A stretch of DNA of 64,000 nt from Mytilus edulis (GCF_963676685.1 NC_092344.1:86118001-86182000), one strand, 5' to 3'. Positions 17,760 through 60,958 are shown, counted from the stretch's first letter. The notes: generated by a model from the letters alone, not told the origin. Numbers and translations are program-made.

Positions 17760-18765
17760 TTGACAGCACACAGTTTAGGAAACATTATTTATGAATTCTG
17801 TAATGAGATATAAATATGCCTTCATGTCTGATTTGTTTTTGTCAATATTAGGGATGTTGTTTCTTAAAAATTACTAACTTTTAACATAAAAGGAGTAAAA
17901 ACAAATCTTTTTAGTCTGTGTATTTACTTTTCTTTGTATTAAAAACATTGAGATGACTTTTTACACCAGGAAGTAATTCAAACTCATTACTACATAGAGT
18001 ATAAAATGATGAATTTATGAAAAACTAAAGTTCATACATGGTTACTTTTGATAAAAAGACTGTTTCAAATATAAAAAAAAAAAATTCATTGATTTTCAGT
18101 TTTAGTATTCCAGTTCTCATGTTATTGTTACAGAGTAAAGACTTTTCAGGAGTATAGAACTAAACAACATTGAATGAGTTTTATTACAAAATCAGATCTT
18201 GTTAAATAGTTTAATATGATCATATCAGTATTATTCTCAACATTTTTTGCTTTATCCATATCATGCAGACAGAAAAATGTGTATCAATTATAACATACTG
18301 AAATTATCTATGAACAAAATAACATGTATATATGTACCTTGGTTTGTGATAGTTATATGTAATAACCAACTTATTACAGTTATTTCAGCCATTTATGAAT
18401 GTATTGACATTAAATAATTATGGATTTAGGTGATACATGTACCATGATATATCGTTTAGTAATTTATTCATTACTGTACATTTAACAAATGTTATCCTTT
18501 TCTGTAAGATTTGTTAATGTATATTTAAGTTAAGTCTTTCAGTATTTATAAAGTTAACTTTTTTCGTTTTTACTATTTAATGAAAAGTTCATCAAACATT
18601 GTCAGCTTGTACTTGAACACTTCATGTATGAAAATATTTACTGCTCAGTGCTGAAAAAAATAAAGGTTTTATGCTTGTCAACAATTAATGCAAATAGATA
18701 TATATTCTAGCTTGGGTATATCTTTTACTAAGAATGTTCAAATTTGGTTAAGTTCTATGTTTTAC

Positions 18766-18789
18766 CTGGGACAAGTATAATAGTCCCAG
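18766..18789. mobile_element. 24-bp hairpin with 7-bp TSD; candidate P/Galileo-type excision footprint
   Basis: CTGGGAC-AAGTATAATA-GTCCCAG, flanked by GTTTTAC at 18759-18765 and 18790-18796. Confidence 0.65.
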
Positions 18790-19978
18790 GTTTTACCTTA
18801 TTTTTTCAAGGAAAAATGTTTTTGATCTTTTGAATAATGGCCTGATTAGTGTTGACCTTTAGAAATCTCAATGACTTTTTACCAACATCTTGTTTTATTC
18901 ATTTTCAGGTAATGACATTTTCTTTTTCATTACATGCTTTAAACAGAAACTGTGATATTTTGTTTTAAACATGATTTATATTCTGTAATTATCATCACTT
19001 TGAAAGGTACAGAGTAAATGTGATTTTTTGTTTGCATTTCCCCTGCACTATTCCTTTTAAAAGCAATGCTCTAAATGAGTCTAAAAAATGTCCAGAAAGG
19101 TAGTCAAAATTGGTGAAACTGTTTTTGACTGTTATTTAAGATTTATTTATAGATAAATGTAAGCATATTCATTACATTTAAAGATTACTGTACGGAATTT
19201 GTTTGGACATTTTAGTCAGATAGTTATTATAAGAAAATATTACCACACAGTTAAGAATCATTTCTTTTATTTATTATGTTTTAAGTCTATTATTTGTGTA
19301 TTTTGTTGGATGGATTTTAAACATGTTCAATAAAGTAAAAGAACAAAATGTGATTGAAGATTTTTTTTTATCTTGAATTGAATAATGTACTTTTTGAAGA
19401 TATGGTATGATTGCAAATGAGACAACTCTCCATAAGAGACCAAATGACACATATATTAACAACATTAGGTAACCGTATGCAACAATGAGCAAATCCCATA
19501 CCGCATAGTCAGCCGTAAAAGCCCCCAAGATGTCAAATGTTAAACAATTCAAACAAACAAAACTAATTGCCTAATTTATGTACAAAATATGAATGAAAAA
19601 CAAATATGTAGCACAGCAACAAACCACACCCACTGAATTACAGACTCCTGACTTGGAACTGTTTATTTGTGATCAAAACAGTTTATCAGACATATGTTAA
19701 TGATCTGATCAGAGCCCTCTAGTTACATGGTATCAATCATTTAATACCATAACCTCTGATGATGTTATTAATGTTGCTTGAGATTATCTAGACTTATACT
19801 GAGGTTATGAGTTTTAATCTGGAATGAATGTTTGACTCCTATCTTAATTGACTTGGATTGTCACTTTTCTTGCAGAAGGTAGGGACTCTTTATTGATACT
19901 CAAACTTTCTCCAGCATTAACAAATGACAGCCACAATAAAGCCAATATTCCTGAAAGTTTTATAGTTAATAATTATAA

Positions 19979-20531
19979 GGAGGCTCACGGGTATAAGATT
20001 TTCAGAAAAAAATCAAATTTATTTTTCATTACAAATTTTATTAATTACCTTCAGTAGTTGTTACTTTATCATATGGTACAAAAAACATTCCAAAATATCA
20101 ATTCGTGTTGACCCCAGGTGACTTTTAAAATGTAGATATTATTGAAAAAGCTCCAAATTATCTCCCTTTGGTGCAAAAATACCATTTTTCGGCGTTAAAA
20201 TTGAAATATCTTGTTTAACTCATCGGTGACCTATATTTCTTAGTGTTGTTTTCCAATAAGCTGTACATAAACTAAATAATTGTAAAATTTAAGCGATTTC
20301 TGTAATTTAGTTCTATTTTTATTTCGATATTACCGATTTCTCCTATTAGTTCAACAGAAAAAATTTACAAAAATGTATGCTTTTTTCAAAAGCAGATTGT
20401 GAGCGTAAATTAACGGTGACCCCATTTTTTTATTTCATTTTTCTATTAAGTATAAGATAAAGATCCTTTATAGAAAAATATAGCGAAATCCTATATTAAA
20501 TAAAAAAATTGATTTAGACCAGCGAGCCCCC
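19979..20531. mobile_element. Kolobok-like MITE
   Basis: Termini GGAGGCTCACGGGTATAA...TTAGACCAGCGAGCCCCC (imperfect TIR); flanks ATAA / TTAA. Confidence 0.6.
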
Positions 20532-21715
20532 TTAAGTCAATATATTGTATGAACATGAATGTCCTGCAGATAATAGATTATGAAAAATTATGTTCATAGA
20601 ATGTATAATTCTATGATATAAATGTTGGTACCTAGATTAACTATGCATAGTTTTAGAACTTTTCATATATTTTTTCTTACCTTTTATATTTTCCATTGCA
20701 AACTTGTTTTATTCTCTTTAGAATCATCTGGTTTGAAAAGGACTAAGGCTTAATTTGGCTATTTTAATATAAACAGGTTTACCTTAAAAGCTGTCTTATG
20801 ACCCAGTGGAATGACTAGTATCACCGTTGTTATTAATAGAACAAAATTGTATGTGTTCAATGAACCAGAACCAAACAAATATTTCAATCAATTAAACTAA
20901 AAGTGTCCAATTGCAACCAAACTTTGAATAACAAATGAAAATTATTATAAATAATTACCAATCTTCATGAAATTTATCCAATGTGGGACAAATTGGAGTC
21001 CTTGATTCCTAACTGAATATCAAAGATTTCAGGCACCATAGAGAATCAGTTATTTGTATGCAACAACATCCAGTACTTGTACCTTGATTACAAAGTCAAA
21101 GGTCAAGGTCCCTCAAAACCTGTATCCTATTCAAATGCAAGGTCAAATATCAAGGTCACAAGCCTATTATGGAAAATAGAAATTCAAATTGGGGGATAGT
21201 GAACAGATATTCAGGTTTGCAGTAACCGAAAGATAGAACAGGTACAGCAGTAAAATAATTGGGAAAACACAGCTGTTTTTATTCTATGGGAATTTGAGGA
21301 GTAACCTATCTTGTTCTAAATTGTTGATGTTGTATGCACAGCAAGTGAAACACTTAACTGTTTGAAGAAGGTAAGCTAATTGAACCAAAATAGAATGTTT
21401 GGTTCAGATTTGTAGTAATGATGAATGCTTTAAATGAATATATACTGGTACTTTTCTTTTAAAAAACACAAGAGAACTCTTTTTGTCAGGAAACACTGTC
21501 AAACATCCAAACATACTATCCACACTGATCTGTGTCCACACTTGTACTTTTCTTTAAAAAAATTGCTACATATCTTCTTTATTGAACAAAAAAAACTAAA
21601 AATATCATATAAAACAATCTTTAATATTTTTAACATTGCACTCTATATATTTTATAACAAATTTCTGGCAAGCAAATTTCAAACAATATAGTGCAAATAA
21701 ACTGTTATCTGAGGC

Positions 21716-24700
21716 TCAGACAGGACCAGTGACCCCATTTGAGTCTCCTCCGGTTATTTTTCTTATCTCACTGAAGGCAAGAACGGCTGATACAGTTGTC
21801 ATGACAACAGAAATCAGTGCTAAACCAAAGGACCATGACATAGATGAATTTTGTTGAGAGAAGTTCATTCTGATAACATCGATTATACTATCTTTGACCT
21901 TGATGGCATACACTATCATTGTCATCATCTGTAAACAGGCTGGAATGTAAAAGGAAGAACGGTATTAAATAGATAATTTTACTAATCTTTGTATGTCCCT
22001 ATAGGTCATCAAGCTCTTCACGTTTCCATGTATTTGTACATATCACTGGCTTTCCAGTGTTTGAGTTTTAGCATTGATGCCCGATGATTTTAAATCCAAA
22101 AAAAAAGCTTCAGACGCACACAATTTATAAAAAGAGAGTCATTGCTATTTGAATGTTGTTATTGGCATATGTGTTGAAAAAATTCCAGTACTGTGGAAGA
22201 CAGCCAAATAGACATGACCAGGCATTAACACTCGAATGTATATCAACAAATTGCAAAGACATACATTTGTAAAATGCAAGCGATGTGTAGTACGAACACC
22301 CTAAAAAAATCTGGAGTGAAACCGATTGCTCTCGGAGTATAAGGATGTTGCATTTCTATGTTCTTTTGAGTTGATGATAGTACGGAATGGTTCAGTGTAT
22401 GTCAATTTGTTTGGTTTTATTGGGTTTCTGTCTCAATGGTGTTTACATCTGTCTCCTTTTATTCATTGGTATGTCACAACTATTCATCATGCTAAAAGTT
22501 GTTGATTTAGAAAAGACTTTTTAGACTAATAACCAGCTTTCTGTATAATTCAAATGCTTTTTGGGTCTTCTCAGAATTCAAAGCAGCTTTTTCAAGACAG
22601 TCTTCGAATAAAAAATTATGCTTATGAAATAAGGAGATTTGGCATGATTGACAAAGAAACGAAAATTCACCAGAGTTCAAATGAAAAAGATACCCTAAGC
22701 CTAATCTTCGACTAAACGCTAGAAATACCTTCACGTCATGGAAACAAAATATCGATTTTTCCAATTCACATTCTATAAATATATAACATTGAATTACCTA
22801 CCTATACTCAAACACAGCAAACATAACGACAATGTAAGAGAGAACATCGTAGACGTCGAGGTTGGACATTTTATAAAGATGATTAGAAATACTACAGTTA
22901 GAACATATCCAAAAATACACATCACCGAAAATGCCTGAACAGCAACTGCAAAATCTGGAGATAAAATGAAAAGAAAAGAAATATTTACATTGCTTATTTT
23001 TCATTAGGTTGTATTTATAGTATATAAATACAAGTTTTTCTCTCTCGATCTTAGAGAAAACAATAAGTAGCTTAACATTTCTAAGATATATAATTTTGAT
23101 AACTTTCAGCACACAAACTAGTAGTCTGATGTTATTTATGTATTATAGTCATTTTGTTTATTTTCTTTGGTTAAATCTTCTGACATCAGACTCGGACTTC
23201 TCTTGAACTGAATTTTAATATGCGTATTGTTATGTGTTTACTTTTCTGCATTGGCTAGATGTATAGGGGAGGGTTGAGATCTCCCATACATGTTTAACCC
23301 CGACGCATTTTTGCGCCTCAGTGTCCCAAGTCAGGAGCCTCTGGCCTTTGTTAGTCTTGTATTATTTTAACTTTTAGTTTCTTGTGTATAATTTGGAGTT
23401 TAGTATGGCGTTCATTATTACTGAACTAGTATATATTTGTTTAGGGGCCAGCTGAAGGACGCCTCCGGGTGCGGGAATTTCTCGTTGCATTGAATACCTG
23501 TTGGTGACCTTCTGCTGTTGTCTGCTCTATGGTCGGGGTCCGTGTAACACTTATCAATTCACAGTTTTAAAAAGTTTTGAAATTTTAGATTTTTAGAATT
23601 TAGATCAAAGTTTTAAAATATCAAATTTCCAAATTGTGTAAAAGTTTTGAAATTTTGAAATTTCAACCAAATATTTAAAATATTAAAATTCTTAATATCA
23701 TTTTTAAAATTTGATAGTTTAGAAATTTGATCAAACTTTAAAAATACTAAACCTTATGTGCAATTTTGATTATTTCACTTTTTGAAAGTTTGATTTTTTA
23801 AATTTTTGATTAAGATATATCAAAACTAGAAAAGGGGCGAAAAGAGGGGTACCTGTAAACTGCAAAACGAAGTAAAAGCGGAACGAAACAAAACAAAATA
23901 AAATGAAAACATACTGATACTTAAAAGTATATCTATATGTTTAAAATAAAACCACAGCCAGACAGTTGTAAGCGGGGAAAAAATTGGATGACAAAATAAA
24001 TTCGTTTTAGAACAAGACTCACGGCTCTGATAATTGGATATAGAAGAGCTAGGATACTGTTATAAAGTATCTACATAAACTCATCGTAGATAAATAACAG
24101 AATGTAAATTTTGTATTTGCGCCAGACGCGCGTTTCGTCTTCAAAAGACTTATGTAATAGTTGCCGCTGTATCTATATATTTAAAATAAAACCACAGCCA
24201 GACAGTTGTAAGCGGGGGAAAATTGGATGACAAAATAAATTCGTTTTAGAACAATACTCACGGCTCTGATAATTGGATATAGGAAGATGTGGTGTGAGTG
24301 CCAATGAGACAACTCTCCATCCAAATAACAATTTATAATGACCATTTTACTTGCTGGTTTCCAAAAAACAATTTATAATGACCATTTTACTTGCTGGTTT
24401 TCCCAGCACCAATATTTTAGGAGTAACAGTAAAATCTGATCAACTCGCAGTAGGTCAAATAATATGGTTAGGTTGAGTATATATTTATATATTTTCTACT
24501 GAACTTTAAGCAATAAAATGGCTCAATACATGTTGTATTATATTTGATTTCAATTTTTTTTTCTGTTTTGCTCTACGAATTCTTACTTTCTGCAATCATG
24601 TCGGCAGATGAATATATACTTCCATGTACATTTTAAACGATCTCATCTTTAACGTTTTAATCAACTATTTCTGTTCTTTATAAATGGTTGGCCATAAATA

Positions 24701-27700
24701 TTTAGCTTTGAGTGTTCCTAAAAAAGGTAGATCCAGAACAGCGCTTCGGTCGTATTTTTTAACGTTTTGTTTTCATTTTTTATCGATTGCCTGACGATCA
24801 TACACATATTGCTTTGTATCAATGATTCCAGTTCCAAGTATTGGTACGGTAGGAAATCTGAATTCATGAAGTATTGGTACGGTAGGAACACTGAATTCAT
24901 GAAGTATTGGTACGGTAGGAACACTGAATTCATGAAGTATTTGTACGGTAGGAACACTGAATTCATGAAGTATTGGTACGGTAGGAACACTGAATTCATG
25001 AAGTATTGGTACGGTAGGAACACTGAATTCATGATGTCGCAATGAACGTTGTGCTAGTCTGGAATGTGGGAGGTTTTTGATATCTTTTTTTATGCTGAAA
25101 TTAAGAGTAAGATCAAATATAAGTAGCTTGGAGCTAGGATACTGTTATAAAGTAGCTACATAAACTCATCGTAGATAAATAACAGGATGTAAATTTTGTA
25201 TTTGCGCCAGACGCGCGTTTCGTCTTCAAAAGACTTATGTAATAGTTGCCGCTGTATCTATCTATCCTTTTGTAGGTGTCGGCATTTTTGAAAAATATTT
25301 TCAAAAGTTTATATTAGCGATAAATGTTCATCTTTTTGGGAATCTGATATATAAATATTGTCACTAAGGTGACACTTTCAACTTGGCCGGATACTTCCAC
25401 GAGGGGCTTCAATAATGGTACATAAAATATTCTTATCCCCAATTCGATAAGAAAAAATATTCTATGCAAGCATAGGACAAAATAAAATATTTTGAATTCA
25501 GATGTTCCCCATGCCTTATAGTGTTGAACTAAATTATTTGATTAATAGTGATGAAAAACTTTATAAAATTATTAGCGCTTAGCGCGATTTTTTTTCTTTT
25601 TTTTTCGCTTCGACATAACAACCATATCCCTATTTTTGAAGTTAAATTGTTGCTCCCTTGGACAACGTTTTACTGTGCGTATTGCTGTGTGTGTTTTTTT
25701 TTTATTCTACATTGGTTAGAGGTAGAGGGGTAGGGTTGTGATCTAAACAAACATGTTTAACCCCGCCGCATTTGTGCGCCTGTCCCAATTCAGGTGCCTC
25801 TGGCCTTTTTAGTCGTGTAGGATTTTATTTTTAGTCCATTGTTATATTTTGGAGTTTAGTAGGACGTCTATTATCACTGAATCATCACTGAACAAGTACA
25901 CTTATTTGTCTAGGGACCAGCTGAAGCAGGCCTAGCACAACGTTCATTGCGACACCATGCATAAATTTAGTATTCTTTCCGTATCAGTAATTGGAACTGA
26001 TATCAATCATAAAAGGCAATGCAATTGATAAAAAAAGAAAACAAAACGTTGAAAGTTGCATGCAACTGAAGCGCTTTTTCTGGATCTACCTTCATCAGGA
26101 ACGTCAAAAAGGCGAATAATACTAGTCAGTTGGCCTACTGCGAGTTGGTCAGTTTTCACTGTTACTTCTAAATGTTTGGCACTGGGACACCAAATAGCTC
26201 TGAATTATATTTGTCTCAAACTCTCACCTTGTATTAGAGATTTAACTCAACTTATTTGATGCCGGTTCAAATAGGTTTGAATATTGATATATTTCGTGCT
26301 ATTTATTCCAAACTAAGAATGATTATAATCAGAGCCGTGTTTACAGGTACCCCTCTTTTTTAGCCCCTTTTCTATTTTTGATATTTTAATCAAAAATTTA
26401 AAAAATCCAACTTTCAAAAAGTGAAAAAAATCAAAATTGCACATTAGGTTTAATATGTAAAAAGTTTTATCAAATTTCTAAACTATCAAATTTAAAAACG
26501 ATATTTAAAATTTTAATATTTTAATTATTTGGTAAAAATTTCAAAATTTCAAAACTTTTACAAAATTTGGAATTTTGATATCTTAAAACTTTGATCAAAT
26601 TTCCAAAAATCTAAAATTTGAAAACGTTTTAGAACTTTAAATTGTTAAGTGTTACACGGACCTTCGGGTTGTTGTCTTTTTGGCACATTCCCCATTTTCA
26701 TTCTCAATTTTATAGGTTGTGATAGTGTAATGGAAATAAGTAAAATGGGTAAATACAAGATTTTCTTTGAAAATAATGTCGAAGTTAACTACATAACAAT
26801 ATTATGACATAACATTTTTGGGAGAATTCGGTGTGTGATCATTCCTGTGTGGTCGCTCTTGTTGATAAGTTTGTAACGAAGCGATGCATTTTGTGTTTGC
26901 CAACTTAATATCATATTGAGCATTCTGAATGAAGTTAAATAATAAAAATAAATCAAAGTACTGAAGTACTGAACATCGGATGACCGCAGGTTCTTGTGGA
27001 TAGTCAAAAGCGCATGTCACAGAAACAGATCACATCTCTATACCTGAAACTTGGGTTAATTTACAGAGATATTTTTTTCTAATAGAAGTTCGTGCTTGGA
27101 TGATGAATAAATGACAGGAAATTCAACCTCACCGTAATAACTATTATATTGTAGTGCAAGAAATCAGTATACCTTGGACTATTATACTTATATAATAATA
27201 GTCGTAGAGAATACACTGGTTTGTTGTTATATAAGTTATTAATATTACGATTGCATGTATATATAATTTTCATCTATTTGTATGTGATAATTCTATTCTA
27301 CTATTATTATAGTGCAGTGGAAGTGCATGGTGGACACTCTTCTGTAAAAAAAAAAATCAAAGCCTTAAAGGCTGTTAAAGCAATTGCTGCCATGTTAATG
27401 TTTTGGGGACTTTTATTTTTCATCTACATATATAAGAATTAAACCTGACAGGACATGGTTGTCTAGTGAAAAGCAAGAAGGTTTTGACTTTATGTCAATA
27501 AAAGACTTAATTTACCAGGCTAAAGTTGGGGGTAATTATGGATTATCCCCTGGTAGTGATTGTAACTCGGCAATAATTACTTTTATTTATTTAATTTTAA
27601 CAATTTTCATAATTAATTTAAATTAACCATTCAGTTAAAACATTTCACCTTTCGAGACGCTGATGTTGAAAAATGGGACAGAAATAAAATAACTTACAAG

Positions 27701-29111: not shown

Positions 29112-29187
29112 CTAAATTAAAATCGAAATTGCAAATTTACAAACAAAAATGATAACAGTTTTATTTCAACATCAGTAAAATGTATAT

Positions 29188-49400: not shown

Positions 49401-49475
49401 ATCATGTTTATAGAAACTAACGTGAGCAGCATATATGCATGATATATGCAAAATTTAAGCACCATTTGGTAAGGG
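46438..49475. mobile_element. EnSpm/CMC-like non-autonomous element (CCC...GGG termini, 2-bp TSD TT)
   Basis: Left CCAATT|CCCGTA, right TAAGGG|TTGTGAAC; subterminal GCATATG / TTGCACGT / TGCTCA repeats at both ends. Confidence 0.65.
46635..48488 (+). mobile_element. HINE with 502-bp tandem units (about 2.5 copies)
   Basis: SubTIR GCTCACCTG...CAGGTGAGC; (GTCC/GTC)n tract; 3' hairpin AGGGTCC-TT-GGACCCT. Near-identical ORFs at 46805, 47307 and 47809 give the 502-bp period. Confidence 0.85.
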
Positions 49476-50465
49476 TTGTGAACTTTCCATTTCTAAGTAG
49501 CAACATTCCAGCAGCACCTGCATACGGGGTATGTATCTCCCAATTGATACGATATTCCCGTGCTTGCATTTCCTATCATGATTTTCTTGATAGAGGGTTG
49601 CTGCTCACAAGGAAGCTATTAAACCAAGAGTTCCAAATGGTGAAGTTATAATCATATCCATTCATAAATTTTACGGACGCCACGGGTGCCACATGTGAAG
49701 CAGGATCTACTTAACCTTCCGGAGCACCTGAGATCACCCCTAGTTATTGGTGGGGTTCGTGTTGCTTATTCTTTAGTTTTCTTTGTTATGTCATGTGTTC
49801 TATTGTTTGTCTGTTTGTCTTATTTCATTTGTAGCCAGGCGTTGTCAGTTGATTTTCGATTTATGAGTTTGACTGTCCCTCTGGTATCTTTCGTCCCTCT
49901 TTTGCAAGAAAGGTCTTTTCAAAATATAGTTAATCTCATTACTCATTAGTGAGAAATTCACACGACAAATAGTGTGTAAGAATTTTAAAGTTTGTTCTTA
50001 TGTTGTGCTGTTACACCAATGCCCCAGGTTAACATTCGGTATGTGGCAGTCCAATGTCAGGAGCATAGATAATTCACTGGTTGTTGTTCGTTGTTGTATA
50101 CTATTATAATTTTAGTTTCTCGTTTGTTTTAATTTTTTACACAAATCAGATCAGGCCGTTGGTTTTCTCGTTTGATAAGTTATACATTTGTCGAACACTG
50201 TATAGCTATGAGGTATTGGTTCTGCTCATTTTTACAGTTCTATGGTGATCTAGAGTTTCTAATATCTACGTTAACTTATTTCGTCTCTGGTAAATTGAAT
50301 CCGTACGACGTGGCACATACTGCCACCTTCATCTAAAGCCTTCTTATGTGAGGAAAAGGGGAATATGCTAGCTATACTGTGATGATATGATTGAAGCTTT
50401 GATCTTTTTTAATTTTTATTTCATAAACATATGTAGACATAACTCTACTTGATTTTTTTCTTGAT

Positions 50466-52628
50466 TTATTCCAGAAAATAAAAAGAGCTTTTTAACTCTT
50501 CATCGAATGGCATAAATCCTGTGCAAACATTTGAATTACAATAACATTTTGTGCCTGTTTTCTGGTCTGGTCTTAGCGTCCCATAAACAAATGATAGCTC
50601 TTCAAGGGGTTCAATATCTCTATTGGCAAATAAGCAAACTTTTGGAACCATATTATTTACTCGTATGGGAACCATTGATAAATTAGGAGAACAACTGTGA
50701 TTTATATACCTCCCGATATTTCCTAACTTATCTGGATCGACAAAGGTTTTTAGTATGTCATTTTTACAGTGCTCCTTTACAGTGAGTATATAATTCATGT
50801 CCGTATCTTTCTGTTTGTTACATCTACTTTGTGCTTCTTGTAAGGATATAATTTCTCCTGCATATTCACATACAAACGTTCCTGATTGTATTTTCTCCAA
50901 AGTCTGAAGACCAAGACCTTTATTGTCCGTATTGAAAATTTGTAATTGTACACTGATTCCGTGCTGTACTACCCTGTTTTGACACTGCGAAGAACATGAA
51001 CAGTTAGAATTACATTCAAATACAGGTGTTACACTGGACCCTAAAAGGGTTAGGTCTATTTTCTTGTCTTTGTATGCATTTCCATATTGAGCAGTACATT
51101 TGCAGTCTCTATCACAAGCTAGGCATTGACAGCCGAGAAGTTTATCTTCGAAATCATCCATCTCACAGCCTGGACCAGGAATGTTTTGTGTGACATACTA
51201 AAATGAAAATTCACAAAGGTAAGAAATAATAAGCAACAATGTCAGGTTAACGTTATCATGGTTATTGTTAAAATAAAAAATGCCGAAACCTTGTTAATGT
51301 ACTAAAATATGAATAACTGACCTGATATGAAAATGTTTGGTTACCGAAAAAAAGTAAACATTATTCTTTAATTATCATAAATGTTTCATAATTTTTTTTT
51401 AAAGATCTACATTGTAGCTCAATATATCTGTTTGTTTACCATGGACAGACGGTATTAACAAATTGCTGCTGAATTTCGTGACACGTATTAACCTGCATAT
51501 TTGGGATTAAGATGTCGAGTTGGGAATCATAACCCACTGGCTCACGTGATAAGACAGACTCGACAGGAATACATAACATCCTACCGGTACCCGGATACAT
51601 TTTCTGACTCTAATTGTAAAAAAGAAGATGTGACCATACCACAAAGTCAGCCATAAAAGACCCCGAAATGACAAATGTAAAACATTTCAAAAGACAAAAT
51701 TAACGGCCTAATTTAGTTCTGGATCCGCAACTGGTGTCGTTAGTCATGTTAGTACCAGAGACATATAATACAATGTATTATATGTCTCTGTTAGTACTAA
51801 ACTATACAGACTAATTTAATCCCGCTGCAAATGTTTGCACCTGTCCTAAGTCAGGAATCTGATGTACAGTAGTTGTCGTTTGTTTATGTAATATATACGT
51901 GTTTCTCGTTTCTCGTTTTGTTTATATAGATTAGACCGTTGGTTTTCCCGTTTGAATGGTTTTACACTAGTAATTTTGGGGCCCTTTATAGCTTGTTGTT
52001 CGGTGTGAGCTAAGGCTCCGTGTTGAAGGCCGTACTTTAACCTATAATGGTTTACTTTTTAAATTGTTATTTGTATGGAGAGTTGTCTCATTGGCACTCA
52101 CACCACATCTTCCTATATCTATAATAGATTCCCCTTACAACATTTTTAATGACCTATACTACCAACAAGTACGCAAACATGCAGTGATTATACACAATGA
52201 AATAATTGTCTGACAATCTTTTGACATGTTTTGACAAAAATTACAATAAAGATATTATTTGACAATTCACTAAAGTAATTATTTTTCTAACTGTGTCTGG
52301 TGAGGAATCAAGAATCCAAGAAAGTAACATGGCAGCATCTTTTATCATCTATAATGTTGGTCCTGAGACTACTGACTACTATAACACAGTGTTACAGTAG
52401 TCATAGTAGTCTCAGATTGATCACACAATACAAAATAATAAACAAGTCCGAAATGTTATACGTAGTGTACATAAAATTAACACTTTATAGATATACTGAT
52501 TTTCGACACCAAATAAGAACCTTGGGACATACCTTCGATTTCTTCATCTTGAAGATAAGAACTTTGTCATTGCTAAATATTGCTTTGTTTTCAAGTCCTT
52601 CAGTCCAGTCAAACTTATTAATATCCAT
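50466..52628 (-). CDS. SETMAR: SETMAR-like histone-lysine N-methyltransferase (pre-SET/SET/post-SET, no mariner domain), 275 aa
   Basis: Exon 1 is 52628-52533 (MDINKFDWTEGLENKAIF...K|gtatgt) and exon 2 is 51197-50466 (tttag|YVTQNIPGPG...GCQC...FECNSNCSC...KGLGL...FVCEYAGE...RYINHSCSPN...EELSFVYG...CYCNSNVCTGFMP). Confidence 0.88.
51756..51790. mobile_element. 35-bp perfect hairpin (17+1+17) with 7-bp TSD; candidate P/Galileo-type excision footprint
   Basis: CAGAGACATATAATACA-A-TGTATTATATGTCTCTG, flanked by TTAGTAC at 51749-51755 and 51791-51797. Confidence 0.8.
52363..52415. mobile_element. 53-bp hairpin with degenerate 7-bp flanking repeat
   Basis: CTGAGACTACT...AGTAGTCTCAG; flanks GTTGGTC / ATTGATC (5/7 match, both differences are transitions). 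Confidence 0.5.
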
Positions 52629-52740
52629 AGTTTAATTTTCCGGAATTCACTATTCTAAATGTTGGTTCGTATTCGGATACACTTATCAATTACCGTGTTT
52701 TAGTCGAGAACTGTACGACAAGGCGAGCAAAGAAAAATAT

Positions 52741-52832
52741 TGCTAAACTGGATAAAAGAAAACGCACTGCTAAACTGGATAAAAGAAAACGCACTGCTAA
52801 ACTGGATAAAAGAAAAAGCAGTTGCTAAACTG
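52741..52832. repeat. 27-bp tandem repeat x3 upstream of SETMAR
   Basis: (TGCTAAACTGGATAAAAGAAAACGCAC)x3 plus a partial copy. Confidence 0.9.
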
Positions 52833-53809
52833 AACCCCAGTATAGAAAGTATATTGAAGGAGACAGTTGTTAACCGTTGGTGCTCACGTAGGATATTGCA
52901 TGTCATTTAGCATGTGAGTTTTGCCTAAGTTTGCTATACTTGAGTCGCCAGGTGTCCCTCTAAGTCTTCCGCCTCATTCATATTTTATTTTAATCGGTTC
53001 TCTATAGATATATGTGCAGAACTAAAAAAAAACAGTATGCCTGTAAAAAACGGACGGCGATTTTTCAGGTCCATAGCATATAGGCAAAAATTCAACATGT
53101 CTAACCATGCTAACATTACAGCTTCATTCGGGAGCTTATATATAAACTGATACAACACGAAGCAGGTGCTACCTGATGAATTTCCGAAGGTTATTGTTTG
53201 AATGGGAAGAATTTAATATTCACAAGTCAATGATTGCTCCTTTTTTCACTAATATTTTCCTTAGCCAACTCAGACGACTTTACCTGTTATAGTGTGTTAA
53301 ACTTTTTCATGATCATATATATATATATATCAACAGAAGTATACCTTCTCTATAAATGATACTAGTAGTAGGTTAAGAGGAAACGCAGCTGAGTTTACAA
53401 CTTCACCATGTCTGCTTTCATGTCGATATGACAGTGCTGTTACTGGATGCTGGACAAAATGCTGGATAAGACGCGGAGTCCACATCTCGAATACATACAG
53501 ACTCTCATCATGACATGTTTGTCGGTTTATATCTCAGTGGACCTGTGGTCCTTTGTCTTAATCATCTTTTACTCCTTATGAGTTATTTTTCATTTGGTAC
53601 AAATTATCATCACTTCGTATTTTATATTTGAATAAAAAACGTAATAGCAAATGTTTTGATAAAACTTTTATTTTACATTTAAGCACTAATAAATATGATA
53701 GCAGTTATGTACAAAAGTATACAATTATAAATACAAGTACATGTACTTTTTTAAATGCAGTTCTTAATGTTTGATTTTGGCACTTTATTACATCTTTGTT
53801 TTCATTTTC

Positions 53810-55210
53810 TCAGCACATGATTTCTCTATCGTCGTCTAAGTCCAGCTGTGGCATGTCCAGATGTGGCATGTCCAACTGAGGTGACCGGTACAACATTGGT
53901 GTCCTTGATCTTGGAGTTTGCATGACTTTTTGTAGATGCTGGGGAACATTCCTGAAAAACTGTGAAATCGGAGATCGAGAGATGGGTTTAACCATGGCAA
54001 CAGGTTTGTTTTTGGTTGTCGATGGAGGAAAATTCCATTGCCTCTGTTCTGGTTGGTTTTTGGCTGTACAACACTTCTCGTCGACTTTGCTCACCACGAT
54101 ATCTGGAAGAGGTCTCCTTTCTGGTAAACTGGCGTCACTGCTCTCGCTACTTTGTCTATGGCGGGGTGAAAACAAACCACTCTTCCTTCTTTTATCTGGT
54201 GAAATTCCTAAGTCAATGACATGAACAAGAGATCGTCTTCCTGACTTCTTTTTTGGAGTTAGTTTAGGCGATTCTGTCAACACGCTGTCATCTAACGTTT
54301 TCAGTGGCCGATTGTTTTTTGTAACACTTTGAAGATACAAATGATTAGGAATTTCCATCTCTTTCCAAAAACTTGACACTTCTTCAGCAAGATCTTGTGG
54401 AATTTTAAACAAATTGTTTCCAGATTCAATCATAAATGCAACCAGGTGACAAAATGTCTTAGTAGTTGTTTGCAGTTCAGTCCCGCTTGATGATTTATTG
54501 CAGAGAAAATGAGGAGTGAATATAATAGCCAGTGAATCCGCTGTCATGAGATTTTCCGGTGTTTTTGAAGTACGATGAAGTAGTGTGATCAATGGTCTCA
54601 GTAAGCAATAGTTGTCACTTGGCATCAGTAACATCAGCATTTGTAGAGCTTTCAAAGTTGTTGTTTTGGCTTTATCTTCGGTTGTCAGTAGACATGCTAA
54701 TCTAGTATACACATTATGGAATCTGTTCGTTAGAAGTGGTTCACAGAGGTCTCGTATGAAGTTCTTTAGCACGTTAGCTCCATCATGAGACGAAATTAGT
54801 TCCAAGTCAATCATGGAACACTCCAGAAGTTGTTTTCTAACAGTTTTCTGGCGGCTTATGTTTCCAGTTTTACGGAATAGTCCTTCATCTTTGATGTTGT
54901 AACTTTTTCCAATGAATTCAATCAAGACTGTGAGAGCAGAAATGGAATCTGGTGTTAGCTGTGTGAATTCCCTCTTTTTAATAGACTTTCTGTAGAACGA
55001 GAGTCTGGAGCTTTTGCGTTTGAGTGTAACCTTCTCAGGGCTCTTTCTGTTCACTTGAGAGTCTATTTCTTGTGTTGTCATAGTCACTGCTTTACCAAGA
55101 CTACTAAGCACCATTTCTTCGAATTTGTTTGGCATGCTATTTTTTAATCTGAAGACATTCCGTTCTGCCTGTTGCTGGCATCTATTGCGTCTAAGAGAGG
55201 ATGTAGACAT
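53810..55210 (-). CDS. Rho GTPase-activating protein, ARHGAP19-like paralogue A (single coding exon, 466 aa)
   Basis: RhoGAP motifs EGLFRKTGN (Arg finger), ANVLKNFIRDLCEPLL and NLMTADSLAIIFTPH; the N-terminal segment RLKNSMPNKFEEMV resembles ARHGAP19. Confidence 0.9.
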   Translation of the reverse strand: MSTSSLRRNRCQQQAERNVFRLKNSMPNKFEEMVLSSLGKAVTMTTQEIDSQVNRKSPEKVTLKRKSSRLSFYRKSIKKREFTQLTPDSISALTVLIEFIGKSYNIKDEGLFRKTGNISRQKTVRKQLLECSMIDLELISSHDGANVLKNFIRDLCEPLLTNRFHNVYTRLACLLTTEDKAKTTTLKALQMLMLLMPSDNYCLLRPLITLLHRTSKTPENLMTADSLAIIFTPHFLCNKSSSGTELQTTTKTFCHLVAFMIESGNNLFKIPQDLAEEVSSFWKEMEIPNHLYLQSVTKNNRPLKTLDDSVLTESPKLTPKKKSGRRSLVHVIDLGISPDKRRKSGLFSPRHRQSSESSDASLPERRPLPDIVVSKVDEKCCTAKNQPEQRQWNFPPSTTKNKPVAMVKPISRSPISQFFRNVPQHLQKVMQTPRSRTPMLYRSPQLDMPHLDMPQLDLDDDREIMC

Positions 55211-55251
55211 TGTTTGTCGTCTTTTGATCGCTGTGAATGTGCAAAAATAAT

Positions 55252-55292
55252 TGAAGTATGAATAACTAATTTAATCTACTATTTTTATATAC
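55252..55292 (-). promoter_or_regulatory. Candidate TATA box and Inr for RhoGAP paralogue A
   Basis: Minus-strand TATATAAAAA at ~55291-55282, with an Inr-like TCATAC about 30 nt downstream and the ATG at 55210. Confidence 0.35.
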
Positions 55293-56359
55293 TAGAAATT
55301 TTACTCTATTATGACATTACTCGTTATGGACTTGGTAGACGTATTGAGGGATAGTTGAGATGAGCTGTCATTAAGTATAGGGAGTCATTAATGAGGTGGT
55401 CTATTTTTGTTTTGATAATTTATTCTTTTACCTATTTCATACATATATCCAAAAAGAAATTAAAGACTTTACAGAAAAAGTAAGTAAATACATATATGTT
55501 TAAATGAATTAAATGCATGAATGTTAAAATGAAATATTTTTTAATTGGGACAATACATTTTCTCAAAAATTATTAGTAAACAGCTTTTATTTCCTATGTT
55601 TTGTTCAATAAATTACAATTTAAAAATGTTAAATATTGTTCCAGTAAATATTTCCGACATCTTCAATCTTTTGTTTTATAAAATTACCTGAATGTTTTTT
55701 AGCTTTAAAACTTCTGTATTTATTTATTTCTCTTGACAATTCCATTTTCTTTTCTTTTTGTTATTTAGTAAACTCAGAAGGTGGATTCTTGTTTGAATGA
55801 ATCTCAGAACTCTATGCTTTATATAACGCTAGTTTAGAAATACTTCATTTTATCAGATTCAAAATAATGATTAATTCCTAAAGTCTATTAATTATTTTTC
55901 TATTTTAATTAAAAACAGATAAATATCTAATCATTCAGTAGTAACTTGGGGCAAAGTTTAACGATCAATTAATTAATGAAGATTAAGAACAATTAATTAA
56001 ACAATATTCATATTTCACACCCTTTTAATAACACGCACCTCTGGTATGAGCCAAGCGTGTGTTTTTTTCACACCTTGACAAATATTGGTATTATAGCTAT
56101 AAGCAATACACACTTCTGCTAAAGACAGCCAGTGCATTTTTCATAAACAAACAACACTTCATTTAATGATGAAACGTCACAACGCATTCATAAAAGGCTT
56201 GTCATACATAAAAAAAAATTGTACTGTGATCTTTATATATATATGTTAAGAACGAAAGGTTCCATACAACGATATCTTTTCTGATATATAAAACAAAAGC
56301 TTCCATCACAATTTTGAGATTTTATTTCGTATTTCAACATCGACAGTATATTGGTACAG

Positions 56360-56390
56360 CAGAGACATAATACAATTGTGTTTGTCTCTG
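56360..56390. mobile_element. 31-bp hairpin with 7-bp TSD; same family as 51756-51790
   Basis: CAGAGACATAATACAATTGTGTTTGTCTCTG, flanked by GGTACAG at 56353-56359 and 56391-56397. Confidence 0.75.
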
Positions 56391-57158
56391 GGTACAGTCT
56401 TCTTATAAATAATGACTAGTTTCAAAAACCTTTTAAAATCTTAGTCATATATTTTTCAGCGCCTATTTTTTAGAGCCATGTTTACTTCATATATATCTTT
56501 GATTTGTTTGTACGTTTACCGCATCGTTGCAATCTTTCGTTTCTATGAAGTCGAAATATCGAAATATAAGTCTTGCGAACTGCAGTCTCTTTCTCCATTA
56601 ACGAGTCTATTTGCACGGTTTCACTAACAATGTATACTTTCAGGTTTATTCATTCTGTTAGCAAAACTGTAGCAAACAAATGGATATACTTGACATCTGG
56701 TACTTTGTATACAAAATATCTTTTGGTCCTAACTTACAGACGACTGGATCAATTTTCAACTAAAATTAATATAGATGTGAAGAGAAAAAATCTTCATTCG
56801 GGTCACCCACTACTCATATTTCTTGTGTATCATTATTGGGATAAAATGCCCGTTTTCGTACTATCGAAGGTATACTAGTACAGTTTTGTATTTTATTCTT
56901 AACAAGTATATTGAATTCTTACAGTGGATTGTCATTAGTGTATTGTGAACTTTATAAATACAGTATCTTGTTGCTATCGTTATCAAAATTAAGAATGAAA
57001 TTAGTATGTATTCAGTAAGATTAATTATATATTAGGTCTATATAAAACAAGGAATTGGACCTTCACAATTTTTGTTAACAATTATCTTCAAAATAAATAA
57101 TTTCATATTTATTCACCATATAAAAAGTTATCAAAGGTACCAGGATTATAATTTTATA

Positions 57159-57200
57159 CGCCAGACGCACGTTTCGTCTACTTAAGACTCATCAGCGACG
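57159..57200 (-). ncRNA. Type I hammerhead ribozyme (minimal, retrozyme/PLE-type)
   Basis: Minus strand reads CGTCG-CTGATGA-GTCT(TAAGT)AGAC-GAAA-CGTGCG-TC^-TGGCG: full core, 4-bp stem II, short stem III, GUC cleavage triplet, and stem I CGUCG/UGGCG. Confidence 0.75.
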
Positions 57201-58531
57201 CTCATATCAAAATAGTTATAATAAAATGATATGATATGTATCTAATCCTCAATAATTTCTACCCATTTCACTTGTTTATTTGTATATACAAACTTATTAT
57301 TTTAAGGATGCCGTGTCATAAAATTACAATTAACATGACTATGGGACCCCGTTCCTTTTTCACCTAACACTAATATAGGTGTCATAATCGTCCCCGAACC
57401 TGTTAAATGTGATTGTTCATGTCCCGCAAGGGTGTGAAATCTGATAACGGGGTTGACACGTGAAAAGACAACTATATTTATTATTTATTAGTGTATTATC
57501 ATTATACCCCATCTTTGTTGATTGGGACAATGACAGATATCTATTCACTTCATTATACATAATTAATCATAACAGTATAAAAAGAAATCGCATTAAACAA
57601 AAAATCATATACTCTTGTTTTGTGAATGAAGACAACATCTTCAATATATTGTCATTATGGATTATAAAGATATTCAAGCTATGAAGTACAGAAGTTTTAG
57701 AGTTACAAGAAATACAGGTATAAATTCTTCTAAACTTAAAAATTAAAACAGAAACAGTTTTTATTTATTAATATATGCAATATCATCATTAGTTTTCCAT
57801 ATTTATAGTAACATCCGAATTTATTTTACCAAAATTTGTGTTTTATTCGTTCACTCCTGTCATAGATGATTTTTTTTTTTAATAAGAACGTTTCTATTTG
57901 GATTTTTTCGTAAATATCATAAATAGTCTTTTTTGTGTTTGCCTTACGATAAAATATAACATCTAAAATATATTGGAGGAATTCGATACTCTTATCTTAT
58001 TCATGATCATTCATCAAATATACATACATATATGTATTAAGTAGATTTTGATTCCATGCAATTTAAAAGATATAAAAAGGGAACAAAGATATTAAAATTT
58101 CGAAAAAAAATCCAAAAATATGAAAACGAAGTTTTTCAAAATAACAAGTGTTTAAAAAAGGTTTTGAAAACAAGAAATTAAACGTTTGTATCTTTGGTAC
58201 GGAAATGCATTAAATATTAAATAAGTGCAGGCAACATTTTATATTAAACTTTTAAGACAAAAGTAATATTTTATTTTCAGGTTGTAACTGACAATTCATT
58301 TGAATGCTGTCTACATCATATTATAGATAATTGACTAAAACACTCTATATTTACTTAATGTAATTTAGTTTAACACTAGAAGGTATGGGGTCATTACAAA
58401 CACACGAGAACTGTTAACCCCTCCCGGTCACGGACATGACATTTTGACACTCATTATTAAATATCATATTTCATGTTTAACTTTTTATTATCATATGAAA
58501 TTTTAACAAGGAAGGATTATAACTTATTAGG

Positions 58532-60958
58532 ATGTTTTCAAACCGGTCTTCATGTAAGTCCTCATATTTACCATATATATCCATGTACTGAGGTTATTAA
58601 ATTGTTCATTTTATTAGTTTTGAAAATGAATGAATTAAATGAATTACAACAGTACTATTTCGAATTATCGATCCAGAATTTTCAGTAAAACATTTATATG
58701 AAATTCATTGATTTTATAAAATCATTTGTCATCGAGAAGAAATTTTCTATTTTGTCAAAAAATATTAAACAAAAACCAATAAGTTTATGATGACTGTGGA
58801 GCTGCAAGTGCCATATGGACTGACTCTCGAGTCTCCCTTTATCAATGAACAAATATTGTCTAATATCATGGAAGTATTACATTCACAGGAACTTCTATAT
58901 ATATTATTAATCAGAATTATTATTTTGTATGTATTTCACGTAACCAAGGAGGTCATGTAACCTCCTTGACGTAACTTTGATATGCTCGCAATAATTTCTA
59001 TGATTAGGAAAATAAGGACATAAATAAATTAAGAATATTAGTATTATTGTGCGTATTATTCAAGAAGCAGAGTCCAAATACACTTTGAATATCAATAACC
59101 GATAGAGCAATTGCATGATTTGACAATTGCTACAGTACCCAATCACACATCGTTGGAACCCACCAAATAAGAAGCCACTAAGCAACACACACACTGATAA
59201 AAATTGAGAATTCAAAGTTATATTTTTACTAAAGAAAATGAATTTCAAACTAAAGATAATGAATGAAGCAAGTTAAAAGTGCATTTTTGGGTAACATCAT
59301 AGCACTGAACTCCGTTAAACATAATCATCAGCTATTGATATATAACTTATTTTACAAAGACCGATATGAATATTACATCCATACTTATAACACTAAAAGA
59401 GTATCACATATACAATACATATATAAGGAGATGAAGGTATTTTACATTAATGAGACAGCATCCCAACAAGACAATAAAGTCATAAAACAATTTGCAGTTT
59501 TAATAATTTATGGCTCATGATTCTATAATATATTAGCTTTATTGTGGATCTATATTAAATCTTTAGTATTAGTTATTATATTTTTATATTACATTTATTT
59601 CAGGGTCTCCAGCACAGTCCGTCAGTAGACTAACACTTCCTGTAAATAGAAGAACCCGTTTTCAACCATCAGAAAAGCACGTATGTAGACTACAGAATTG
59701 CATGCCTCTGAAGTTTAAAGAGTTTGTAAAGTCACACTTATCAACAATCCTTGAAATACCACAAGATGACCTTGAGACATTGATGATATCACCTACTGCA
59801 CCTGTTCCACAACACAAGACGGCTCTTTCGTTCAGTAAGAGAAAAGCTCAGAAACAGTCTATGTTTGGCTCCGACCTTTCACCAGAGAATATTGCATCAG
59901 TGCTTCAGTTGATCAACTACCTCTCCCAAGATGGCGTCATATCTACAGAAGGTTTATTCCGTAAAACTGGTAACATATGCAGACAGAAGCAGTTGAAATC
60001 AAAGCTAGACTCAGCAACACTTACCGAGAAATACTTGTCATCGTTATCTCCACACGACAGTGCCAACGTTCTCAAACGCTACATTCACAATCTACCAGAA
60101 CCTCTTCTAACTCAAAAGTTCTTCAATGTATATGTTCAGATTACCAACATCACCAAGTCAACAAAAGAAGAAACAATGTCTGCCAAGATCCAAGCTATGC
60201 AACTTGTTCTCCATCTTTTACCATCCGACAACCTCAACTTATTGAAGCCATTGATGACACTCCTCAACAAAGCCGCATCCATCTCTAGTAACCTGATGAC
60301 AGCTTATTCTTTGGGTATTTTATTCGCACCTCATCTTCTCTGTGACCGTCATTCGTCAGCTGACAATCTTCACTCTGTTCTACCGAAAGTTTCCGATTTG
60401 GTTTCCATAATGATAGAGAATGGCCCACATATATTTAGTATACCTAAAGACTTGTCTCGATCCGTAGCTAACTTCTGGCGAGAGATGGAGGTACCAAACC
60501 AGCTTTATTACAGAACAGTTCAAGAAACTACAGACTCAGCTGTTATAGACAGGACGTCACCGAAAGTTCACGTCGTAGACCTCTGTGACAAGCCAAAAGC
60601 CACCAGTACACTCACAGTGCCCTTCACACCTCCAACAAAATCTCGTAAGAGACTGAGTAGTGACACTAGTGATGGTATCCCAGAGAAGAGACCTACACCA
60701 GAGATGTTCCTTTCACCATTATGTAATGTACTCGACTTTAAGCCAAAACTCAGTAAGCAGACTAATTCCATCATCTTCAGTACAGCACCTGGATCTTCTT
60801 CCAAGAAACCAGTAGCACGTGTTAAACCAATTCAACATTCACCCATATCTCAGTTCTTCAAGAGTGTGCCACTCAAGCTTCAGCGGGTTATGTCAACACC
60901 GAGATCTCGTGCTCCGATGGCTCTGTTTCAGTCACCAAGCCACTGTGTGAAGTTTTAA
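58532..60958 (+). CDS. Rho GTPase-activating protein, ARHGAP19-like paralogue B (about 458 aa)
   Basis: Main exon 59604-60958 (tttcag|GG) is open upstream of ATG 59702 and homologous to the N-terminus of paralogue A. A proposed start exon 58532-58553 (ATGTTTTCAAACCGGTCTTCAT|gtaagt, phase 1) fits the frame. Motifs EGLFRKTGN, LPEPLL and NLMTAYSLGILFAPH are present. Confidence 0.88.
58945..58968. mobile_element. 24-bp hairpin with 7-bp TSD; candidate P-type footprint
   Basis: CAAGGAGGT-CATGTA-ACCTCCTTG, flanked by ACGTAAC at 58938-58944 and 58969-58975. Confidence 0.72.

What the first reader, a model, noticed from the sequence alone, without database searches (positions are those of the whole stretch)
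18759..58975. Family of tiny hairpins with 7-bp TSDs: probable P/Galileo-type excision footprints
Seen in sequence: five 24-53 bp palindromes, each bracketed by a 7-bp direct repeat. They are at 18766-18789 (GTTTTAC), 51756-51790 (TTAGTAC), 52363-52415 (GTTGGTC/ATTGATC, degenerate), 56360-56390 (GGTACAG) and 58945-58968 (ACGTAAC). There are three terminal types: CAGAGAC, CAAGGAG and CTGRGAC. Established: P-element transposase cuts leaving 17-nt 3' overhangs of TIR at the donor site, so end-joining leaves about 15-17 bp of each TIR between the TSDs; Galileo (P superfamily) makes 7-bp TSDs with a GTAGTAC-like consensus. Inference: these are scars of cut-and-paste by several P-superfamily families, at roughly one per 13 kb here. 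Standard repeat annotation would miss a class this short.
Basis: partly seen in the sequence, partly recalled or inferred. Interest (0 to 1): 0.8.

Follow-up and report, generated by a model that had tools for sequence, protein, structure and literature searches.

The report
Mussel P-type transposon excision scars
The tiny hairpins are scars left where P-element-like jumping genes cut themselves out of a mussel chromosome; thousands exist genome-wide, and their fixed stub length suggests that the fruit-fly P element's odd 17-base staggered cut is shared by distant relatives.

Summary
All five palindromes with 7-bp flanking repeats are where stated. A strict scan finds 4 in the window against 0.04-0.12 in shuffles, and only at a flank length of 7. 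A sixth, decayed one lies at 27166-27214.

Each terminal type belongs to an abundant class in this 1.37-Gb Mytilus-like genome: 1,833, 625, 518 and 128 short palindromes, against 0, 0, 11 and 0 for reversed-pattern controls.

In the best-studied family (CAGAGACATATAATACA...) the full element has a 32-bp inverted repeat. The scars keep at most 17-18 bases per arm: 34, 35 and 36 bp make up 34 of 50 sampled. Shorter forms and forms with filler at the junction make up the rest. That pattern fits repeated repair of a fixed staggered cut, not a copied mini-element.

Longer copies with the same ends carry remains of a THAP9/P-type transposase in a constant position and orientation. The flank logo is R-T-n-n-n-A-Y, like Galileo's GTANTAC.

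Scars of different families cluster within a few kb. Two window scars are also present in contigs of runs labelled as three other organisms, and no empty allele was seen.

The scan had already reached the same reading elsewhere in this genome (s1-832309, s1-834659). The kind is known; the natural, multi-family population in a mollusc appears to be unreported.

The parts
18759..18796 (.). Scar 1, family E (consensus terminus CTGGGACTATTATAC). TSD GTTTTAC on both sides, 24-bp body at 18766-18789. The right arm keeps 14 nt and the left arm 7 nt, with 3 nt of filler.
   Evidence: The class CTGGGAC-N0-30-GTCCCAG has 518 sites genome-wide against 11 in the control.
27166..27214 (.). TSD AGTATAC/AGAATAC (6 of 7 match), 35-bp body at 27173-27207, with mutated termini CTTGGAC...GTCGTAG.
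51749..51797 (.). Scar 2, family A. TSD TTAGTAC on both sides, 35-bp body at 51756-51790, made of an 18-nt and a 17-nt stub of the 32-bp TIR.
   Evidence: The identical 35-bp form is seen at 12 of 50 sampled sites. It lies 25 bp from a very high-copy repeat, so reads could not resolve its alleles.
52356..52422 (.). Scar 3, family C (terminus CTGAGACTACTATAACACA). Degenerate TSD GTTGGTC/ATTGATC, 53-bp body at 52363-52415. Both arms carry an extra GACTACT copy.
   Evidence: 625 sites genome-wide, control 0. It is present in a spanning contig of run X6, organism C (record 26).
56353..56397 (.). Scar 4, CAGAGAC type, decayed. TSD GGTACAG on both sides, 31-bp body at 56360-56390. The arms have diverged from family A/B.
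   Evidence: It is present in spanning contigs of X1, X3, X6 and X20, labelled organisms A, B, C and E (records 7, 23, 31 and 16).
58938..58975 (.). Scar 5, family D (terminus CAAGGAGGTTATAT...). TSD ACGTAAC on both sides, 24-bp body at 58945-58968.
   Evidence: 128 sites genome-wide, control 0. The identical 24-mer also occurs at C1:22950327.

Best explanation
These are donor-site scars of cut-and-paste transposons of the P (THAP9-like) superfamily.

Proposed mechanism:
1. An element inserts and duplicates 7 bp of target.
2. Later its transposase cuts the transferred strand at the element's end and the other strand about 17-19 nt inside the inverted repeat.
3. Each chromosomal end therefore keeps a 3' single-stranded stub of the repeat.
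4. End joining then produces a 20-40-bp palindrome between the two intact copies of the 7-bp duplication. Repair can fill in and join bluntly, anneal at short homologies, or copy small scraps at the junction.

Shown here:
- the structures and their excess over chance;
- their genome-wide abundance;
- the 17-18-nt cap on the arms in family A;
- longer family-A elements that share the termini and hold P-type transposase remains.

Inferred:
- the position of the cut, which is read from the scars and not measured;
- the repair route;
- that families C, D and E work in the same way.
For: Structure and chance: 4 strict hits against 0.035-0.115 expected, and only at flank length 7. Flank mismatches are bimodal.

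Abundance in the genome:
- CAGAGACAT..ATGTCTCTG: 1,833 sites, control 0.
- CTGAGACTACT..: 625 sites, control 0.
- CAAGGAGGT..: 128 sites, control 0.
- CTGGGAC..: 518 sites, control 11.

Cap on the arms: the family-A TIR is 32 bp. Among 50 sampled scars with both 17-nt arms, 7 are 34 bp, 12 are 35 bp and 15 are 36 bp. All 15 of the 36-mers have AT in the middle, which is TIR base 18 on each side. No arm reaches base 19. Longer forms carry scraps copied from the TIR. With 13-nt arms there are 476 sites and the commonest length is 36. Only 146 intact termini remain.

Parent elements:
- A 5,341-bp element has a 32-bp TIR and TSD ATGGTCT/TTGGTCT.
- At least 40 left-end copies sit at different sites.

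Transposase link:
- P0008 (891 aa, Mytilus coruscus 'THAP9') has the RNase H N-terminal domain, the GTP-binding insertion domain and the RNase H C-terminal domain.
- It is 92.8% identical to the ORF in L043.
- Its N-terminus lies 1.0-1.4 kb inside the left end, in the same orientation, in L055, L057, L064, L071, L072 and L073. It also lies inside the L031 element.
- Its residues 464-891 follow a family-A left end in L079.

Flank logo (n=44): R-T-n-n-n-A-Y. Galileo's is GTANTAC (PMC4168063).

Published background: P transposase cuts 17 bp inside its repeat (PMC7776569).
Against: - No empty-site or occupied allele was seen at the window's sites. Scars 3 and 4 are present in all runs that cover them, so excision here is inferred and not observed.
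- For families C, D and E only one or two TSDs each could be read, and no parent element or transposase was tied to them.
- The same 34-, 35- and 36-bp sequences recur at many sites. Copying would produce that too.
- No THAP domain was detected in P0008.
- No intact transposase of the family-A type was found in this genome. The best copies are broken or partial.
- Some scars were secondarily amplified inside other repeats, so the counts slightly overstate the number of independent events.
Confidence: 0.85

Rival explanations
1. The palindromes are minimal mobile elements ('nano-MITEs'). On this view 34-36-bp pairs of repeat ends are themselves moved by the transposase, each making its own 7-bp duplication.
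For: - Identical 34-, 35- and 36-bp sequences recur at many unlinked sites, each with a different TSD.
- They outnumber the intact elements.
Against: - The variation is not point mutation around one master sequence. It is a graded series of central deletions, microhomology joins and junction scraps, while the outer arms stay perfect.
- Arm length stops sharply at 17-18 nt of a 32-bp TIR. A deletion-derivative origin would not predict that.
- The fruit-fly P element needs at least 138 and 216 bp at its ends to move, as cited in PMC1562414.
- All five termini families show the same architecture.
Confidence: 0.07
2. The scars are real, but some families (C, D, E) were made by a different transposon superfamily that also leaves long stubs.
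For: - Only family A was tied to a P-type transposase.
- The ends of several intact P-like genes in the genome could not be found.
Against: - The other families have the same 7-bp duplication, the same C-W-R-R-G-A terminal motif and similar maximum sizes of 36-38 bp.
- At least 47 P-type transposase matches exist in the genome.
- From my own knowledge, no other eukaryotic superfamily is known to cut 17-19 nt inside its repeat.
Confidence: 0.06
3. The palindromes and flanking repeats are chance features of AT-rich DNA.
For: The window is 32% G+C.
Against: - Shuffles give 0.035-0.115 against 4 observed.
- Reversed-pattern controls give 0, 0, 0 and 11 against 1,833, 625, 128 and 518.
- The signal exists only at a flank length of 7.
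Confidence: 0.01

Closest known systems
Excision footprints of the Drosophila melanogaster P element (17-nt staggered donor cleavage followed by end joining)
   Same: - Both copies of the target duplication are kept.
- Between them lie inverted stubs of the terminal repeat, capped at about 17 nt each, with microhomology and small templated fillers.
- The 17-nt cut is described in PMC7776569. The footprint spectrum is from my own knowledge of the Drosophila literature.
   Different: - The duplication is 7 bp, not 8 bp.
- The cap is 17-18 nt in family A and appears to be about 19 nt in families B, C and D.
- These are old, natural scars found in four runs labelled as four organisms. They number in the thousands and come from several families in a mollusc. 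They are not laboratory excision products.
- The transposase shows no detectable THAP domain in the one full-length relative examined.
Galileo / 1360 branch of the P superfamily (Drosophila)
   Same: - 7-bp target duplication.
- A palindromic target preference. Galileo's is GTAGTAC, GTANTAC or GTATTAC (PMC4168063). Here it is R-T-n-n-n-A-Y.
   Different: - Galileo has very long, internally repetitive foldback repeats. Family A here has a plain 32-bp repeat.
- The relationship of the transposases was not tested.
P-MITEs of Anopheles gambiae and BuT5 of the Drosophila repleta group
   Same: They are short, non-coding relatives that share ends and target-duplication length with P-type master elements (PMC1562414, PMC3698922).
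   Different: - Those are elements of hundreds of bp with subterminal sequence, and they are copied by transposition.
- The objects here are 20-50 bp, lack subterminal sequence, and vary at the junction in the way repair products do.
Zebrafish Pdre2 / THAP9
   Same: It is a P-type system outside insects that can be excised by its own transposase and by the fly transposase (PMC10983969).
   Different: - Pdre2 has 8-bp duplications.
- Its excision products in cells showed larger flanking deletions rather than stereotyped stub pairs.

Membership tests
P (THAP9-like) superfamily of DNA transposons | Target-site duplication of 7-8 bp | tested here: met
   There are exact 7-bp duplications at 4 of the 5 window sites, and at 20 of 20 zero-mismatch candidates in the window plus 294 kb of other loci. 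The signal is essentially confined to k=7: one hit at k=5 and none at k=6, 8 or 9. The full 5.3-kb element has a 6-of-7 match.
P (THAP9-like) superfamily of DNA transposons | Transposase with a split RNase H-like catalytic domain that carries a GTP-binding insertion domain | tested here: met
   This holds for family A only. P0008 and the L043 ORF carry PF21787 and PF21788, and P0008 also carries PF21789. Pieces of this protein lie inside family-A elements in a constant position and orientation.
P (THAP9-like) superfamily of DNA transposons | N-terminal THAP zinc-finger DNA-binding domain | tested here: inconclusive
   Pfam reports no PF05485 hit in P0008 or in the 930-aa ORF. The gene models may lack an upstream exon. 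More distant hits in other animals do carry PF05485.
P (THAP9-like) superfamily of DNA transposons | Staggered donor cleavage about 17 nt inside the terminal repeat | tested here: met
   This evidence is indirect. Scar arms are capped at 17-18 nt of a 32-bp repeat. Lengths of 34, 35 and 36 bp account for 34 of 50 sampled scars, and no arm reaches base 19. No biochemical measurement was made.
P (THAP9-like) superfamily of DNA transposons | GTP as a cofactor of transposition | not testable with these tools
   Only the presence of the GTP-binding insertion domain can be seen.
Galileo-type (foldback-like) P elements | Terminal inverted repeats hundreds of bp long and internally repetitive | tested here: not met
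   The family-A repeat is 32 bp and the two subterminal regions differ.
Galileo-type (foldback-like) P elements | 7-bp duplication with GTANTAC-like consensus | tested here: met
   The logo from 44 flanks is R-T-n-n-n-A-Y. T is 57-67% at position 2 and A is 67-77% at position 6. The comparison is with PMC4168063.
MITE (miniature inverted-repeat transposable element) | Copies related by descent from a master, with a uniform internal sequence | tested here: not met
   The internal part varies as a series of junction deletions and fillers, while the arms stay perfect.
MITE (miniature inverted-repeat transposable element) | Retains the sequences the transposase needs in order to move it | not testable with these tools
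   The only guide is the fruit-fly requirement of at least 138 and 216 bp at the ends, as cited in PMC1562414.

The most novel reading that the evidence does not exclude
Some of the recurrent, identical 34-36-bp palindromes are not passive scars. They would be the smallest mobile units of a P-type transposon, re-mobilised by the transposase from stub pairs alone. That would be far below any known minimal transposon substrate.
Probability: 0.07. Interest if true: 0.75.

Novelty: new member of a known kind. Interest (0 to 1): 0.5.

Why it matters
P-type scars can be recognised from sequence alone, because the enzyme leaves long stubs of its own repeat. This genome therefore holds a readable record of thousands of past excisions.

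- **Cut position per family.** The record gives the cut position for each family without biochemistry: 17-18 nt in family A and about 19 nt in others. This supports the view that the 'unusual' long staggered cut of the fruit-fly P element is an old property of the whole P/THAP9 superfamily.
- **Repair route.** It suggests that end joining, and not only copying from the sister chromatid, commonly repaired these breaks in the mussel germ line.
- **Insertion hot spots.** Scars of different families share hot spots a few kb wide. In this window they lie beside the 5' sides of genes.
- **Annotation.** This is a class of repeat of at least 3,100 sites that ordinary repeat annotation would probably miss. 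I did not test that.

Tried and rejected
- **Ends of the intact P-like genes.** I looked for repeats and duplications around the 798-, 855-, 861-, 886- and 930-aa ORFs with my own scans and with the repeat finder. No convincing termini were found, so those families remain untied to any scar type.
- **First transposase test on family-A left ends.** It used only the genome's own long ORFs and found nothing. The link appeared only when the full-length Mytilus coruscus relative P0008 was used.
- **L079 alone.** It could have been a chance juxtaposition, since 30 other copies differ beyond about 730 bp. I gave it weight only after the N-terminal matches in seven other copies.
- **Complete short family-A elements inside the fetched loci.** None were found.
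- **Whole-genome letters.** I therefore could not read genome-wide TSDs for families C, D and E or the upstream part of the C9 element. Matched letters were also withheld. I did not try to obtain flanks by other routes.
- **Other sources of DNA.** A metagenome scan with P0008 was blank.
- **Reads.** They could not resolve scar 2, because a repeat with depth of about a million starts 25 bp away.
- **Literature.** Five searches that ran found no paper describing natural genome-wide P-type scars. The library is incomplete, so this is weak evidence of novelty.
Full report
**1. Observation**

Reading the five sites confirms each palindrome and each flanking 7-mer at the stated coordinates. The third site has only 5 of 7 flank bases matching.

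I ran a strict mechanical scan: exact k-mer flanks, an exact 7-nt terminal inverted repeat, and a body of 14-80 bp.
- It returns exactly the four perfect sites at k=7.
- It returns one non-simple hit at k=5 and none at k=6, 8 or 9.
- Two hundred dinucleotide-preserving shuffles give 0.035 hits per window. Shuffles within 500-bp blocks give 0.115.

I then took 1,262 short C...G inverted-repeat candidates from the window plus 294 kb of other loci of the same genome. The number of mismatches between their two 7-nt flanks is bimodal. Twenty have none, where under one is expected, five have one, and the rest follow a random distribution. The feature is real.

A sixth, decayed example lies at 27166-27214.

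**2. The genome**

- The window is C1:86118001-86182000 of a 1.37-Gb assembly with 32% G+C.
- Matches fall on 14 large numbered contigs, C1-C14.
- 'Gill metagenome' runs hold the stretch.
- The closest proteins are from Mytilus species.
- Other agents' notes name Mytilus galloprovincialis.

I treat it as a Mytilus mussel.

**3. Each terminal type is an abundant class**

| Pattern (short palindrome) | Sites | Reversed-pattern control |
|---|---|---|
| CAGAGACAT-N0-30-ATGTCTCTG | 1,833 | 0 |
| CTGAGACTACT-N5-35-AGTAGTCTCAG | 625 | 0 |
| CTGGGAC-N0-30-GTCCCAG | 518 | 11 |
| CAAGGAGGT-N0-30-ACCTCCTTG | 128 | 0 |

- The CAGAGAC class holds two repeat variants: family A (...ATATAATACA) and family B (...ATATATACACAT).
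- Further termini with the same architecture and exact 7-bp flanks turned up in the other loci: CAAGGATTTGTATA twice and CAGGGACTTTC once.
- All of them begin C-W-R-R-G-A.
- The four classes sum to about 3,100 sites, or one per 440 kb. The window's one per 13 kb is therefore a local cluster.

**4. Scars or mini-elements?**

Family A allows a test, because its full repeat is known. A 5,341-bp element at C1:25624916-25630256 has 32-bp repeats that begin with the same 17 bases and continue AGAGATT..., with flanks ATGGTCT/TTGGTCT.

Genome-wide, 164 sites have both 17-nt arms and at most 30 nt between them. The first 50 are distributed as follows.

| Length (bp) | Sites |
|---|---|
| 34 | 7 |
| 35 | 12 |
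| 36 | 15 |
| 37 | 2 |
| 38 | 2 |
| 39-56 | 12 |

- Every 36-mer has AT in the middle. That is base 18 of the repeat on each side.
- No arm reaches base 19.
- The longer forms contain scraps that repeat parts of the arms.
- With 13-nt arms there are 476 sites. Of the first 50, 36 bp is the commonest (12), then 30 bp (8) and 31 bp (6), and only filler-containing forms are longer than 36 bp.
- Among 30 random loci holding the 17-mer, about 17 are two-armed scars. Their second arms are 8-17 nt and their junctions all differ.

So the arms are perfect, the junction varies, and the length stops abruptly at 18+18. That is what repeated repair of a fixed cut predicts. It is not what descent from a master copy, or random internal deletion, predicts.

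Families B, C and D show the same graded series. Their longest filler-free forms are 36-38 bp, which suggests stubs of about 18-19 nt. Their full repeats are unknown, so this is weaker.

Intact family-A termini number only 146. Scars therefore outnumber surviving elements about 6.5 to 1 (476 scars against about 73 elements).

**5. Link to the P superfamily**

- The genome has at least 47 matches to the P-type RNase H N-terminal domain, with open frames of up to 930 aa.
- The 930-aa frame carries the RNase H N-terminal domain, the GTP-binding insertion domain and the RNase H C-terminal domain.
- A word search found P0008, an 891-aa Mytilus coruscus 'THAP9' with the same three domains. It is 92.8% identical to a broken gene in L043.
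- Laying P0008 on all stored loci gives consistent matches:
  - Its first 140-170 residues lie inside family-A elements, on the same strand as the left end. They sit 1.0-1.4 kb from the CAGAGAC terminus in L055, L057, L064, L071, L072 and L073, and 2.8 kb in within the L031 element.
  - In L079 a family-A left end is followed by residues 464-891.
- On C9, two termini 28.6 kb apart enclose the L043 gene in the matching orientation.

This ties the family-A ends to a P/THAP9-type transposon. No intact gene of this type was found in this genome. No THAP domain was detected in P0008.

**6. Target sequence**

Forty-four flanks (20 scars and 24 intact left ends) give the logo R-T-n-n-n-A-Y. T is 57-67% at position 2 and A is 67-77% at position 6. 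Galileo's published consensus is GTAGTAC, GTANTAC or GTATTAC, also with 7-bp duplications (PMC4168063).

**7. Clustering and setting**

- In C1:0-40.5 Mb, the 75 listed scars of families A, C and D form 10 neighbour pairs within 5 kb. The expectation is 0.69, and none of 20,000 simulations reaches 10. Five of the pairs are between different families.
- The window's cluster at 51.7-59 kb lies between three genes:
  - a SET-domain gene at 50466-51161, minus strand;
  - a RhoGAP gene at 53810-55210, minus strand;
  - a head-to-head RhoGAP paralogue at 59702-60958, plus strand.
- Scars 2, 4 and 5 lie 0.6-1.2 kb from the starts of these open frames.

A shared preference for gene 5' regions, as is known for the fly P element, is my inference. 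It was not tested genome-wide.

**8. Reads**

I laid contigs of four runs, coded as organisms A, B, C and E, on 51400-57300.
- Scar 4 is present in spanning contigs of all four runs.
- Scar 3 is present in a spanning contig of organism C.
- No empty or occupied allele appeared.
- Scar 2 could not be resolved, because a repeat with depth near a million starts 25 bp away.

Scars 3 and 4 are therefore not private to the assembled individual. If the coded labels are distinct species, they predate their separation.

**9. Comparison with what is known**

- P transposase of Drosophila cuts the 3' strand at the element's end and the 5' strand 17 bp inside the 31-bp repeat. This leaves 17-nt 3' extensions, and the donor break is repaired by homologous repair or end joining (PMC7776569).
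- The objects here behave in that way.
- They are not Galileo-like in structure, because the repeat is short and plain.
- They are not MITEs in the usual sense. Anopheles P-MITEs keep about 100 bp of each end (PMC1562414).
- Five literature searches that ran found no description of natural genome-wide P-type scars.
- Within this scan, other agents reached the same reading at other places in this genome (s1-832309, s1-834659).

**10. Limits**

- Matched letters were withheld later.
- As a result, TSDs for families C, D and E rest on one or two sites each. Their parents are unknown, and the intact M. coruscus element could not be inspected.

**11. Verdict**

The mechanism is a known one. The population, its size, the per-family cut length and the hot-spot clustering are additions worth a moderate score.

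Noticed in passing
window 51815-52122 and 57126-57221: These are two pieces of an extremely high-copy repeat, with summed contig depth up to millions. Many contigs of other copies join 52122 directly to 57126. In this window, 5,003 bp lie between the two pieces, including the RhoGAP gene and scars 3 and 4. I saw no inverted repeat or duplication at the two edges.
   Followed up: partly
L047 (G000:C1:42978000-42987999), about 3879-9837: This is a perfect inverted duplication of about 6 kb. It holds two copies of an 861-aa P-like transposase frame facing each other. It may be a foldback-like arrangement or an assembly artefact.
   Followed up: no
G000 C6, C5, C4, C9; L044:3724-6117: A 798-aa P-like open frame occurs in at least 10 copies with the same score, which suggests a recently active family. 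I could not find its ends, and Pfam sees only the first RNase H domain.
   Followed up: partly
G000:C1:82311575/82312338 and C1:92030086/92030851; also L010, L028, L029: Two pairs of 30-bp family-A scars share the same spacing (763 and 765 bp). Three loci share the flank next to a one-armed remnant. Some scars have therefore been copied secondarily inside other repeats, which slightly inflates the counts.
   Followed up: no
L006:1460-1541 (G000:C1:2709996-2710077): This is an 82-bp product between exact ATATTAC flanks. It keeps about 37-41 nt of the left end, then restarts with a second 17-nt terminus and a right arm. It looks like aborted template-copying repair followed by joining.
   Followed up: no
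window 50466-51161 (-), 53810-55210 (-), 59702-60958 (+): A SET/pre-SET gene exon lies here, with the pre-SET domain truncated, so an upstream exon is likely. There are also two intron-free RhoGAP paralogues arranged head to head.
   Followed up: partly
window about 52352-52357: Contigs of three runs (X1, X3, X6) lack 5 bases at the edge of scar 3's left flank repeat. This may explain part of that duplication's decay.
   Followed up: no
L023:1490-1524 (G000:C1, near 26430413): A family-A single arm is enclosed by an inverted 7-mer (CTGAGAT...ATCTCAG) and then by a direct GTTTGAG repeat. It may be one scar nested within another, or a palindromic repair product.
   Followed up: no
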